From Euprymna scolopes (lineage: Eukaryota): a stretch of DNA of 63,025 nucleotides. Shown here piece after piece: positions 59,751 through 61,874 of this stretch (the first letter of the stretch is position 1; each line of letters begins with the position of its first letter). The DNA is taken from the NCBI GenBank assembly GCA_053919585.1, contig CM132786.1. One strand, written 5' to 3'. Under the pieces are notes generated by a model. The model saw only the letters and a list, made by a program, of their open reading frames with translations, ran no database searches and had not been told where the DNA came from. The position numbers and the translations under genes are program-made.

Positions 59751-61060
59751 TGTGTTGCATATTACGGTCCCGAGCAATGGCGGGTAGCCCCGCTAGTTCC
59801 TCATAAAAGCCAATGTGGGTTAGTGATTACTGATGAGATTTTAATGTATCAATTAGTAATACACACGGACAGAAAAAAAACGCTTTGGATAATCAGATTT
59901 CAAGGTAGTTCTACTAAAATACCCATATTTTTTAAAACCAAAGCACTTCAAGTCTTCAAATTACTACTGTTTTGTTCAGAAATGAATATACTTTAAAATG
60001 AATTAAAATATATAATGTACATTCATATTTATTAAGAGTTTTTAAGGCAAATAAAATGATAAAAAAGGTGAATGTCATAAAATGGCGTTTTCGGTAAGGT
60101 TTTGTAATGACCCCCTCTGATTTCTAAAGGCCCGTACCGTGATTGTATGAAGAATTTTGTTATGAAATTTGGTAATCAATCAGAAGAGGTGTTAATCTTA
60201 ATACTGTCAAGTGTCCAAAATATTTTTGACTATTTCTTTTTTTGTTGTGTTAAAAATAAGACTTTAATATGACGAGTATCAAACATTTTGGAAAAAAAAT
60301 TTCTTCGGACACCCACTAGTAAGTAAATCAATCTTTTTACTATCTTTATCAATTAAAAGTATTATTGCCTGTTGAGTAGGACCGTGGTAATTGATAATAA
60401 TTTAAAAGGACCTACCCGAAAAAAAAAACGTTTCTATTTTTTGAGTTTGGACAAATGTAGTATTAGTAGCAGCAACAGCAGCTGAGGTATTAGCGATAGC
60501 ACAGTGTAAACAACATGCGTTCTTTAATTTTTATTCCAGAACGAATTAAGAAAAACATGAAAATATGAATATAAATGTTCTTATATGTTTAATTAGAGCT
60601 ATTTTGTTATCAGAATAACATTAGTTCAGAACTATTCTGTTTTCAGAATGTGTATATATATATGTGTATATGCATATAAACATATATATATGTGTGTATG
60701 TATATGCATGTGTGTGTATGTATATGCATGTGGTGTGTATGNNNNNNNNNNNNNNNNNNNNNNNNNNNNNNNNNNNNNNNNNNNNNNNNNNNNNNNNNNN
60801 NNNNNNNNNNNNNNNNNNNNNNNNNNNNNNNNNNNNNNNNNNNNNNNNNNNNNNNNNNNNNNNNNNNNNNNNNNNNNNNNNNNNNNNNNNNNNNNNNNTC
60901 TTTGGTAGAGCACTCTTGTAAATTATCTTACTCGCTGCTTAATTTAGCTGAAATAATGCGAAGCTCGCGATTTGTTTACAAAACAAACGTTTGAGCCCTC
61001 TACGAGTAGCGGACGAATGTTTATTTAAATAATCGTTCGGATAGGTTAATTTCGGCCACC

Positions 61061-61133
61061 GATTCCGTAGTCATGTGGGTAGGACTGCCGACTGTCATCA
61101 CGACGGTTCTAGGTTCGATCCTCGGCTTGGGAG
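61061..61133 (+). promoter_or_regulatory. tRNA-Asp-derived internal RNA polymerase III promoter (repeated in units 2 and 3)
   Basis: A box 61068-61078, D-stem agtc/gact, CTGTCA anticodon-loop relic 61092-61097, B box 61112-61121, 3' TGGGAG resembling the tRNA-Asp acceptor end; anticodon and acceptor stems do not pair. Confidence 0.7.
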
Positions 61134-61138
61134 AGGTG

Positions 61139-61199
61139 TTAGTCTAGCGGCACTGATGAGTTGTGATACAACGAAACAGGTCTGTATGTCGATGACTAA
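61139..61199 (+). ncRNA. Type I hammerhead ribozyme, unit 1 (predicted cleavage after GUA at 61186)
   Basis: Stem I ttagtc-tag-cggca / tgtcg-at-gactaa; CTGATGA 61153-61159; stem II gttgt-gat-acaac; GAAA 61173-61176; stem III acag-gt-ctgt. Confidence 0.92.
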
Positions 61200-61460
61200 A
61201 ATATATTTTATAAAGCTCCCCTCTTTGGTAGAGCACTCTTGTAAATTATCTTACTCGCTGCTTAATTTAGCTGAAATAATGCGAAGCTCGCGATTTGTTT
61301 TACAAACAAACGTTTTGAGCCCTCTACGAGTAGCGGACGAATGTTTATTTAAATAATCGTTCGGATAGGTTAATTTCGGCACCGATTCCGTAGTCATGTG
61401 GGTAGACTGCCGACTGTCATCACGACGGTTCTAGGTTCGATCCTCGGCTTGGGAGAGGTG

Positions 61461-61521
61461 TTAGTCTAGCGGCACTGATGAGTTGTGATACAACGAAACA
61501 GGTCTGTATGTCGATGACTAA
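61461..61521 (+). ncRNA. Type I hammerhead ribozyme, unit 2 (predicted cleavage after 61508)
   Basis: Identical to unit 1. Confidence 0.92.
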
Positions 61522-61780
61522 AATATATTTTATAAAGCTCCCTCTTTGGTAGAGCACTCTTGTAATTATCTTACTCGCTGCTTAATTTAGCTGAAATAAT
61601 GCGAAGCTCGCGATTTGTTTACAAACAAACGTTTGAGCCCTCTACGAGTAGCGGACGAATGTTTATTTAAATAATCGTTCGGATAGGTTAATTTCGGCCA
61701 CCGATTCCGTAGTCATGTGGGTAGGACTGCCGACTGTCATCACGACGGTTCTAGGTTCGATCCTCGGCTTGGGAGAGGTG

Positions 61781-61841
61781 TTAGTCTAGCGGCACTGATG
61801 AGTTGTGATACAACGAAACAGGTCTGTATGTCGATGACTAA
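61781..61841 (+). ncRNA. Type I hammerhead ribozyme, unit 3 (predicted cleavage after 61828)
   Basis: Identical to unit 1. Confidence 0.92.
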
Positions 61842-61843
61842 AA

Positions 61844-61874
<31 letters not shown>

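What the first reader, a model, noticed from the sequence alone, without database searches (positions are those of the whole stretch)
60899..61854. Tandem tRNA-headed hammerhead-ribozyme array: candidate new retrozyme / circular RNA family
Seen: at least three near-identical ~321-bp non-coding units, each with a complete type I hammerhead (stem I with internal loop, CUGAUGA, 5-bp stem II, GAAA, stem III, GUA site). Predicted cut sites at 61186, 61508 and 61828 are 322 and 320 nt apart. Known: metazoan non-LTR retrozymes (e.g. schistosome Sm-alpha, newt satellite 2, cricket pDo500) are tandem hammerhead repeats whose multimeric transcripts self-cleave to monomers that can circularise, and they are thought to be copied by a helper retroelement RT. 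Inference: this is a young retrozyme-type element producing ~321-nt monomer or circular RNAs, with the head-to-tail array formed by rolling reverse transcription of a circle. The class is known; whether this particular family is described could not be checked.
Basis: partly seen in the sequence, partly recalled or inferred. Interest (0 to 1): 0.9.

Follow-up and report, generated by a model that had tools for sequence, protein, structure and literature searches.

The report
Young tandem hammerhead retrozyme in (TA)n
This is a real and very young mobile element: a 322-bp non-coding unit carrying a self-cutting hammerhead RNA motif and a tRNA-like promoter piece, copied head-to-tail into TA microsatellites at about 1,900 places in a 5.9-Gb animal genome. 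It is a new family of an already known kind of element.

Summary
Window 60899-61854 carries 3.0 tandem units of 320-322 bp (98% alike). Each has a type I hammerhead core with predicted cuts after 61186, 61508 and 61828.

It is not a local satellite or an assembly artefact:
- The genome holds 3,396 exact copies of the 44-nt core, 4,645 unit-to-unit junctions and 1,924 identical array ends.
- All 20 fetched arrays lie inside (TA)n tracts. Each has a fixed 3' end 24-26 nt past the cut site and a variable, truncated 5' end.
- One 322-nt sequence makes up 132 of 166 sampled units. One locus shows a target-site duplication.
- Six single-cell RNA reads place an RNA 5' end at, or 1 nt past, the predicted cut.

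Best reading: a non-LTR retrozyme, close to schistosome Sm-alpha. It is copied from an uncut or re-ligated (circular) RNA by a (TA)n-targeting reverse transcriptase, probably that of the abundant Penelope-like elements.

Not shown: circular RNA, rolling-circle copying, Pol III use of the tRNA-like module (which fails tRNA detectors), and the identity of the helper.

It is the array-forming branch of a superfamily of at least 14,600 copies. This scan had already noted sister families elsewhere in this genome. Verdict: new member of a known kind, moderate interest.

The parts
60899..61854 (+). Whole array: 5' partial unit (60899-61186, unit positions 36-322), full units 61187-61508 and 61509-61828, 26-nt terminal tail 61829-61854
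   Evidence: TRF period 320, 3.0 copies, 98%; BLAST of the unit against the window tail
61139..61199 (+). Hammerhead 1 (type I): stem I 61139-61144/61194-61199 and 61148-61152/61187-61191, CTGATGA 61153-61159, stem II 61160-61172, GAAA 61173-61176, stem III 61177-61184, cut after 61186
   Evidence: Read; pairs checked; Rfam sub-threshold Hammerhead_3 hit 61133-61182
61461..61521 (+). Hammerhead 2, cut after 61508
   Evidence: Same motif, (Rfam hit 61455-61504)
61781..61841 (+). Hammerhead 3, cut after 61828
   Evidence: Same motif, (Rfam hit 61775-61824)
61063..61134 (+). tRNA-like module of unit 1 (Asp-GTC-like, 8-nt anticodon loop); A-box-like 61068-61078 (TAGTCATGTGG, 2 mismatches), B-box-like 61112-61122 (GGTTCGATCCT, 1 mismatch), box starts 44 nt apart
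   Evidence: ARAGORN only at -ps80, which also of 400 shuffles; box scan; no ARAGORN default or Rfam tRNA hit
61386..61456 (+). tRNA-like module of unit 2 (one G missing relative to the master)
   Evidence: Alignments
61705..61776 (+). tRNA-like module of unit 3
   Evidence: Alignment
61829..61854 (+). Terminal tail: unit positions 1-26 (3' strand of stem I, then a TA-rich stretch with the unit's only T4 run at 61848-61851). This is the fixed 3' end of every array
   Evidence: Same end in 20 of 20 fetched arrays and 1,924 exact genomic junctions; T-run scan
61855..61874 (.). (TA)n target microsatellite at the 3' junction
   Evidence: TRF row 61843-61874; all 20 other arrays are flanked by (TA)n
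60648..60741 (.). TG/TA-rich microsatellite on the 5' side, followed by the N run 60742-60898 that hides the 5' junction

Best explanation
A non-autonomous, non-coding retroelement of the non-LTR retrozyme kind.

Unit layout (322 bp, numbered from the cut site): a 26-nt TA-rich tail, a 170-nt AT-rich body, a tRNA-like module with A- and B-box-like motifs, and a type I hammerhead.

Proposed cycle:
1. Arrays are transcribed (promoter not established).
2. The hammerhead cuts after GUA. Its helix III is too weak in one molecule, so two ribozymes of a multimer probably pair through a 10-bp shared helix III.
3. An RNA in which the cut site is intact or re-ligated (a circle or an uncut multimer) is reverse-transcribed on a nicked (TA)n tract. 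Copying is primed at the TA-rich tail just 3' of the ribozyme.
4. Copying runs over several unit lengths and stops at variable points, giving head-to-tail arrays.

The enzyme is most likely supplied by the abundant Penelope-like elements of this genome.

Shown: the anatomy, copy number, insertion signature, youth, and an RNA 5' end at the cut. Inferred: dimeric cleavage, circle formation, the nature of the template, Pol III transcription and the identity of the helper.
For: Anatomy:
- The hammerhead core and all 20 pairs are present.
- The unit is non-coding: the longest frame is 101 codons, with stops in all six frames.

Spread (reversed-pattern controls 0):
- 3,396 exact 44-nt cores, 4,645 unit junctions and 1,924 identical termini.
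- Arrays lie on at least 25 large contigs.

Retrotransposition signature:
- 20 of 20 arrays end at unit position 24-26 and run into (TA)n. Their 5' ends vary between positions 1 and 145, and both flanks are (TA)n.
- L049 has the 13-nt sequence GACTCTGATTTAT on both sides, plus 14 nt of filler at the 5' junction.

Youth: one master sequence makes up 132 of 166 units and occurs in 20 of 21 arrays. There are 25 substitutions in about 49,600 nt.

Template: the 3' end lies past the cut, so a fully cleaved monomer cannot be the template.

RNA:
- Reads are present in poly(A) and single-cell libraries.
- Template-switch-oligo junctions fall exactly at unit position 1 (3 reads) and position 2 (3 reads).
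- Variant sites in diverged expressed copies spare the 11 core letters (CUGAUGA and GAAA) and the GUA cut-site triplet. They fall in loops, give G-U pairs, or in one case (position 275) unpair the last pair of stem I.

Dimer: the monomer helix III adds only -0.6 kcal/mol, against -9.4 for the intermolecular 10-bp helix.

Helper:
- 15,396 GIY-YIG and 31,686 Penelope-like ORF candidates, many with open frames of 800-920 aa.
- (TA)n bias, short tails, 5' truncation and partial tandems are described for these elements (PMC8557442).
- Retrozymes have been tied to their terminal repeats in vertebrates (bioRxiv 10.64898/2026.07.22.740005).
Against: - No Rfam hammerhead model reaches its gathering score.
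- No cleavage assay exists, and in vivo support rests on 6 reads from one run.
- No evidence tells circles from multimers.
- The predicted fold of the 322-nt RNA is no more stable than shuffles (z -0.74), unlike the highly self-paired retrozyme circles described in PMC7229834.
- Most poly(A) reads come from diverged sister copies, not from the master, so expression of the young family itself is not established.
- No template-switch 5' end falls at the expected Pol III start near unit position 197.
- The same variant recurs at non-adjacent units in some arrays.
- All 20 sampled 5' ends fall in the first 45% of the unit, which is unexplained.
Confidence: 0.8

Rival explanations
1. A classical tRNA-derived Pol III SINE that merely carries a hammerhead (strict Sm-alpha model). 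Each unit would be an independent Pol III gene starting at the tRNA-like head and ending at the T4 run. It would insert as a monomer, and the arrays would be secondary.
For: A- and B-box-like motifs lie at the canonical 44-nt offset, and the only T4 run of the unit lies 20 nt past the cut. The same cloverleaf is called in a 78%-identical sister copy. Most of the 14,624 superfamily copies with other stem III loops look solitary in the listed part. Sm-alpha is tRNA-Gln-derived and carries a hammerhead (PMC2770079).
Against: None of the 20 arrays starts near the predicted Pol III start at unit position 197; all start at 1-145. A transcript from head to T4 would be about 147 nt and would lack unit positions 27-198, yet whole units are copied 2-21 times per insertion. 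The tails of sister families have no T4 run. The tRNA detectors fail, and the relaxed ARAGORN call is also made in 12% of shuffles. No RNA 5' end is seen at position 197.
Confidence: 0.12
2. Ordinary satellite DNA that expanded locally by unequal crossing-over or replication slippage. The hammerhead would be incidental or decayed, with no RNA-mediated spread.
For: Repeated variants at non-adjacent units within some arrays (L032, L031) suggest some exchange or conversion after insertion.
Against: About 1,900 dispersed loci share the same terminal junction. The 5' ends are truncated and one locus has a target-site duplication. Units are identical across contigs. The ribozyme core is intact in 3,396 copies.
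Confidence: 0.03
3. Assembly duplication of a single unit.
For: The window array abuts an N run. Its units differ from the master mainly by homopolymer-length changes, which could be sequencing errors.
Against: Arrays of 2-21 units lie on many contigs without N. The sequence is held by runs from about 10 studies. A 352-nt contig from an independent run matches with no differences.
Confidence: 0.01
4. The same element, but mobilised by a (TA)n- or microsatellite-specific LINE rather than by a Penelope-like element.
For: LINE reverse-transcriptase fragments are common around the arrays and in the window. No direct sequence link to a Penelope-like element was obtained.
Against: In the literature read here, hammerheads, head-to-tail partial tandems, short tails and (TA)n bias together are features of Penelope-like elements. 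Those elements are extremely abundant here, with long open frames.
Confidence: 0.1

Closest known systems
Metazoan non-LTR retrozymes (Cervera & de la Pena 2020, PMC7229834; coral, mussel, axolotl)
   Same: Tandem non-coding repeats within the 150-450 bp range, each with a type I hammerhead. G+C is below 50% (43% here). There are no LTR, PBS or PPT features. Target-site duplications are longer than 4 bp. Helix III is weak and favours dimeric cleavage, as in the amphibian examples. RNA is detectable.
   Different: A tRNA-like A/B-box module lies directly 5' of the ribozyme; that paper mentions neither Pol III, SINE nor microsatellite. Insertion is strictly into (TA)n, with one fixed 3' terminus 24-26 nt past the cut. 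The predicted RNA is not unusually self-paired. Circles were not shown here.
Schistosome Sm-alpha / Sj-alpha SINE-like elements (Ferbeyre 1998; Laha 2000; as described in PMC2770079 and PMC8490949)
   Same: A tRNA-derived module and an active-type type I hammerhead in a unit of about 335 bp; thousands of copies; tandem and dispersed copies.
   Different: Sm-alpha is detected as tRNA-Gln by tRNAscan, whereas this module fails the tRNA detectors. Whether Sm-alpha also targets (TA)n was not checked in the papers read.
Terminal repeats (pLTR) and tails of Penelope-like elements (PMC8557442; PMC4209133; bioRxiv 10.64898/2026.07.22.740005)
   Same: Hammerhead in a repeated terminal region, head-to-tail partial tandems, 5' truncation, a short extension ('tail') at one end, and (TA)n insertion bias in Neptune and Naiad types. 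Such elements are abundant in this genome.
   Different: There is no ORF in or next to the arrays. The ribozyme is a classical type I with a stem I internal loop, not the minimal Penelope type. Similarity to a resident element's terminal repeat was not tested.
Newt satellite 2 and cave-cricket pDo500
   Same: Tandem hammerhead repeats whose ribozymes have a weak helix III and work as dimers (statements in PMC7761336).
   Different: Known mainly as satellites. The precise microsatellite-targeted insertion signature documented here is not part of their description in the papers read.

Membership tests
Hammerhead ribozyme, type I | Conserved core CUGAUGA ... GAAA ... and a UH cleavage site | tested here: met
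   CTGATGA, GAAA and GTA are present in all three units and in 3,396 exact genomic copies.
Hammerhead ribozyme, type I | Three helices around the core, with helix I open-ended | tested here: met
   Stem I 11 bp with an internal loop, stem II 5 bp, stem III 4 bp on paper; all 20 are standard pairs. In one molecule helix III is limited to 3 bp.
Hammerhead ribozyme, type I | Score at or above an Rfam hammerhead gathering threshold | tested here: not met
   No hit at gathering. The best is Hammerhead_3 at 19.2 against 48.5 bits. This is a detector threshold, not a biochemical criterion.
Hammerhead ribozyme, type I | Self-cleavage at the predicted site | tested here: inconclusive
   Six template-switch junction reads put RNA 5' ends at unit positions 1-2. 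No in vitro assay.
Non-LTR retrozyme | Short tandem repeats (150-450 bp), each with a type I hammerhead | tested here: met
   322-bp units in arrays of 2-21.
Non-LTR retrozyme | Non-coding; no LTR, PBS or PPT; G+C below 50% | tested here: met
   Longest frame 101 codons, G+C 43%. Arrays are flanked directly by (TA)n.
Non-LTR retrozyme | Dispersed insertions with target-site duplications | tested here: met
   1,924 termini. One clear duplication at L049. The other sites are uninformative because the target is a microsatellite.
Non-LTR retrozyme | Accumulates as small circular RNA | not testable with these tools
   Reads cross the cut site, but the tandem DNA makes circles and multimers indistinguishable.
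tRNA-derived Pol III SINE (Sm-alpha type) | Recognisable tRNA-derived region with A and B boxes | tested here: inconclusive
   B box has 1 mismatch (0 in the sister copy), A box has 2 mismatches, and the offset is 44 nt. ARAGORN calls it only at -ps80 (12% of shuffles also called). Rfam tRNA gives no hit at E up to 10.
tRNA-derived Pol III SINE (Sm-alpha type) | Full-length copies begin at the tRNA-like head | tested here: not met
   None of the 20 arrays begins near unit position 197.
Non-autonomous derivative of a Penelope-like element | Penelope-type insertion signature: (TA)n bias, 5' truncation, partial tandems, short tail | tested here: met
   compared with the description in PMC8557442.
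Non-autonomous derivative of a Penelope-like element | Sequence similarity to the terminal repeat of a resident autonomous element | not tested
   DNA of the resident elements could not be fetched. The one Penelope-like contig obtained (L051) is from another species, and its 96-nt flanks show no similarity.

The most novel reading that the evidence does not exclude
The arrays are single-event products of rolling-circle reverse transcription of a 322-nt hammerhead-processed circle. Copying would be primed by the nicked (TA)n target annealing to the TA-rich tail, and carried out by a Penelope-like enzyme. The circle would carry its own Pol III promoter, so every new array is self-transcribing. 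With about 1,900 near-identical insertions, this would be the clearest genomic footprint so far of how animal retrozymes move, in a family that is probably still active.
Probability: 0.3. Interest if true: 0.7.

Novelty: new member of a known kind. Interest (0 to 1): 0.5.

Why it matters
How animal retrozymes are copied back into DNA is still a model, not a demonstrated mechanism. This family offers an unusually clean record of it:
- thousands of essentially unmutated units;
- one precise 3' terminus, which shows that the template had an intact or re-ligated cut site;
- a single target motif;
- variable unit numbers per insertion.

That makes it a good natural system to test three questions: rolling-circle versus multimer templates, the Penelope-like helper hypothesis, and whether a tRNA-like module gives such elements their own promoter. 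It also matters for annotation, because the superfamily (at least 14,600 copies) escapes both the Rfam hammerhead models and the tRNA detectors used here.

Tried and rejected
- Rfam at gathering score found nothing. Permissive scans gave only sub-threshold hammerhead hits and chance sRNA or snoRNA hits.
- ARAGORN at default settings found no tRNA in the window or in six loci.
- The fold of the 322-nt RNA is not more stable than shuffles.
- Open frames in the window and 20 loci were scanned for a helper. Only one old Penelope-like reverse-transcriptase fragment (L035:802-2048), several LINE fragments and an integrase-like frame were found.
I did not try to get that DNA another way.
- A profile-free search with the L035 fragment gave only distant representatives (51% identity or less). 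The 806-aa hit P0106 is from another species (35-39% identical to this genome's copies), and its contig has 96-nt flanks with no similarity to the unit.
- Arrays starting exactly at the cut site are rare (14), so cleaved 5' ends are not the usual template end.
- The search for target-site duplications was uninformative at 19 of 20 loci because the flanks are microsatellites.
- Strand of the poly(A) reads: the first mate lies mostly in element sense, but the library chemistry is unknown, so the transcribed strand cannot be read from that run.
- No held paper prints the core sequence or describes such elements in cephalopods or other large-genome molluscs.
- The organism is coded. Only 'mollusc metagenome' labels on some runs that hold the sequence hint at the group.
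Full report
**Observation.** The window has a tandem array at 60899-61854: period 320, 3.0 copies, 98% matches. Read against one unit, it is made of four pieces:
- a 5' partial unit (60899-61186, unit positions 36-322);
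- two full units (61187-61508 and 61509-61828);
- a 26-nt tail (61829-61854).

The left edge touches an N run (60742-60898), so the true 5' end is hidden. On the right the array runs into (TA)n.

Every unit carries the elements of a type I hammerhead:
- stem I, made of TTAGTC/GACTAA and CGGCA/TGTCG around an internal loop;
- CTGATGA;
- stem II, GTTGT-GAT-ACAAC;
- GAAA;
- stem III, CAG-GT-CTG closed by an A-U pair;
- GTA.

All 20 proposed pairs are standard pairs.

Rfam does not call it at gathering score. The best permissive hit is Hammerhead_3 at 19.2 bits against a cut-off of 48.5. One likely reason is structural. A 4-bp helix III with a 2-nt loop cannot close within one molecule. Only 3 bp with a GGUC loop is possible, which adds just -0.6 kcal/mol. 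Two ribozymes could instead share a 10-bp helix III worth -9.4 kcal/mol. This is the weak-helix-III, dimer-dependent layout reported for amphibian retrozymes and newt satellite 2 (PMC7229834; PMC7761336).

**Not local, not chance, not an artefact.** The genome (5.9 Gb, 925 contigs) gave these exact-pattern counts, with reversed-pattern controls of 0:

| Pattern | Exact copies |
|---|---|
| 44-nt core plus cut site | 3,396 |
| Unit-to-unit junction | 4,645 |
| Terminal junction (cut site + 26 nt, then TATAT) | 1,924 |

That makes at least 6,500 units at about 1,900 loci, on both strands in similar numbers. Runs from about 10 studies hold the sequence. An independent run yields a 352-nt contig with no differences.

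**Insertion signature.** I fetched 20 arrays with flanks.
- All 20 end at unit position 24-26 and continue into (TA)n.
- All have (TA)n-type microsatellite on the 5' side as well.
- Their 5' ends are variable: positions 1, 6, 15-17 (five arrays), 35, 38, 61-66, 66, 88, 98, 98, 107, 118, 122, 126, 128 and 145.
- Arrays hold 2 to 21 units.

At L049 the unique sequence GACTCTGATTTAT stands on both sides of the insertion, with 14 nt of filler at the 5' junction. This is a target-site duplication that starts inside the TA tract. The other sites are uninformative because the flanks are repeats.

A fixed 3' end, truncated 5' ends, a target duplication and a single target motif are the marks of target-primed reverse transcription.

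**Age.** One 322-nt master sequence accounts for 132 of 166 full units and occurs in 20 of 21 arrays. Eleven arrays are pure master. Leaving out L048 and the window, there are 25 substitutions in about 49,600 nt (0.05%). The window's own units differ from the master mainly by homopolymer-length changes next to a gap, which may be sequencing errors. The sample was drawn from the best-scoring matches, so it is biased towards young copies.

**What the template must have been.** The 3' end of every array lies 24-26 nt beyond the ribozyme cut. A fully processed linear monomer would end at position 322, so it cannot be the template. The RNA copied had the cut site intact (an uncleaved multimer) or restored (a ligated circle).

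The tails of sister families lack the T4 run but keep the 3' strand of stem I followed by TA-rich sequence. The fixed end is therefore better explained by priming of the nicked (TA)n target on a TA-rich tail than by Pol III termination.

Arrays that start exactly at the cut site are rare (14 genome-wide). Cleaved 5' ends are thus not the usual template end.

The data do not separate a rolling circle from a long multimer:
- Uniform arrays fit both.
- The same variant at non-adjacent units (L032 units 1, 5 and 12; L031 units 7 and 9) is not expected from one circle, unless conversion occurred later.
- All 20 sampled 5' ends lie in the first 45% of the unit. Under uniform truncation this has a probability near 1e-7. 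I cannot explain it. The many termini without a full core (1,924 termini, against an estimated 700 or so loci with a core, extrapolated from contig C1) show that shorter insertions do truncate elsewhere.

**The tRNA-like module.** Unit positions 199-270 (61063-61134) fold into a degenerate cloverleaf with a GTC-containing 8-nt anticodon loop.
- ARAGORN reports it only at a relaxed threshold, one that also of 400 shuffles. At default it reports nothing. Rfam tRNA gives no hit at E up to 10.
- In its favour: a B-box match with one mismatch (perfect in a 78%-identical sister copy), an A-box-like match with two mismatches, and the canonical 44-nt offset between the box starts. The same cloverleaf is called in the sister copy.
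- Between master and sister, this module and the ribozyme are better conserved (82% and 85%) than the rest of the unit (72%).

I read it as probably tRNA-derived, but its promoter function is untested. It is not at the head of anything defined by the data. No array starts near position 197, and no RNA 5' end was seen there.

**RNA.** Raw reads of a poly(A) library and of a single-cell oligo-dT library lie on the unit at low depth (91 and 67 reads, then 158 and 103 at a looser threshold).

In the single-cell run, reads that carry the template-switch oligo mark RNA 5' ends:
- three reads join it exactly to unit position 1;
- three join it to position 2;
- other clusters lie at position 41 (4 reads) and, on the antisense strand, at position 302 (3 reads).

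The three letters before position 1 are GUA, so strand invasion by the oligo's GGG does not explain that junction. This is modest but specific support for cleavage in vivo.

Most poly(A) reads leave the master at position 12 or position 220 and carry several differences. They therefore come from diverged sister copies, probably inside other transcripts. Across those diverged reads, the listed variant sites in the ribozyme are positions 275, 281, 284, 303, 308 and 317. Positions 281, 303 and 317 lie in loops. Positions 284 and 308 turn G-C pairs into G-U pairs. Position 275 unpairs the last pair of stem I. None touches the core (14 further variant sites were not shown).

**Wider family and helper.** The 3' half of the ribozyme, with any stem III loop, occurs 14,624 times.
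- The GT loop marks the array-forming family.
- GA, TA, AT and AA loops are mostly solitary in the listed part.
- A sister copy lies tail-to-tail with the young array at L038, and a 45-nt inverted fragment lies at L033.

Penelope-like elements are extremely abundant: 15,396 GIY-YIG candidates and 31,686 ORF candidates. Many have open frames of 800-920 aa, and they are often clustered head-to-head. (TA)n bias, tails, truncation and partial tandems are described for such elements (PMC8557442). A 2026 preprint ties vertebrate retrozymes to their terminal repeats. I could not fetch the resident elements to test for a shared module, so the helper remains an inference.

**Comparison and verdict.** The element works like, and meets the tested criteria of, a non-LTR retrozyme (PMC7229834). 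It also has the architecture reported for schistosome Sm-alpha, a tRNA-derived module plus a hammerhead (PMC2770079). It fails the strict SINE criterion that copies begin at the tRNA head.

No paper in the library prints its core or describes such a family. Dfam and Repbase could not be searched.

Earlier notes of this scan describe sister families in the same genome. These include a 286-bp tandem family that another agent judged a known kind with a Penelope-like insertion pattern. I treated these as leads only. My own tests on this family agree with them.

Verdict: the finding is real. It is a new member of a known kind and of moderate interest. Its main value is as an unusually clean record of retrozyme insertion.

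Noticed in passing
window 57351-59158: Separate tandem array just upstream: 159-bp period, about 11 copies, only 73% alike (also scored at 315 bp). My motif scan found no hammerhead core in it.
   Followed up: partly
window 59412-59725: 52-54-bp tandem repeats, 3-5 copies, 71-75% alike, between the 159-bp array and the retrozyme.
   Followed up: no
window 130-804 (-), 6630-7860 (+): LINE-type reverse-transcriptase fragments (Pfam RVT_1, E 6e-10 and 3e-32).
   Followed up: partly
L033:8150-8200 (- strand): A different type I hammerhead-like motif (CTGATGA, 5-bp stem II GAAGC/GCTTC, GAAA, TGCC-CT-GGCA, TA, stem I CTCTT/AAGAG). It lies about 300 nt from the (TA)n tract that holds the array, so another ribozyme family is nearby.
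   Followed up: no
L038:2543-3034 (+): 1.5 units of a 78%-identical sister family, tail-to-tail with the young array across one (TA)n tract. Its core reads CTGATGG and stem II has a mismatch, so it is probably dead.
   Followed up: partly
L035:802-2048 (+): Old Penelope-like reverse-transcriptase fragment (KGLNF, ADKG and YVDD-type motifs; 36-39% identical to P0106), about 1 kb from a retrozyme array. It is cut off by microsatellite.
   Followed up: partly
L045, about 100 nt 5' of the array (around L045:4402, - strand): A 14-bp perfect inverted repeat (CGCGTTTCATCCAC / GTGGATGAAACGCG) around a CCTGACGA-containing loop. It could be a minimal hammerhead-like hairpin or chance.
   Followed up: no
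L036:9016-9858 (-): 281-codon open frame that looks like an integrase core (HIDFAGP...LVLVDSYSKW). It had no Pfam hit at E 0.01.
   Followed up: partly
unit position 41 (window 61548; L036:3300): Four template-switch junction reads mark a sense RNA 5' end at GGTAGAGCAC. Three arrays (counting the window's, whose 5' end abuts an N run) start at positions 35-38. The origin is unknown: a start site, a processing site or an artefact.
   Followed up: partly
window 44678-44773: Perfect triple tandem of a 32-bp unit (100% matches).
   Followed up: no
window 60742-60898 and 62397-62897: Both N runs sit directly next to TA/TG microsatellites. The first hides the 5' junction of the array.
   Followed up: no
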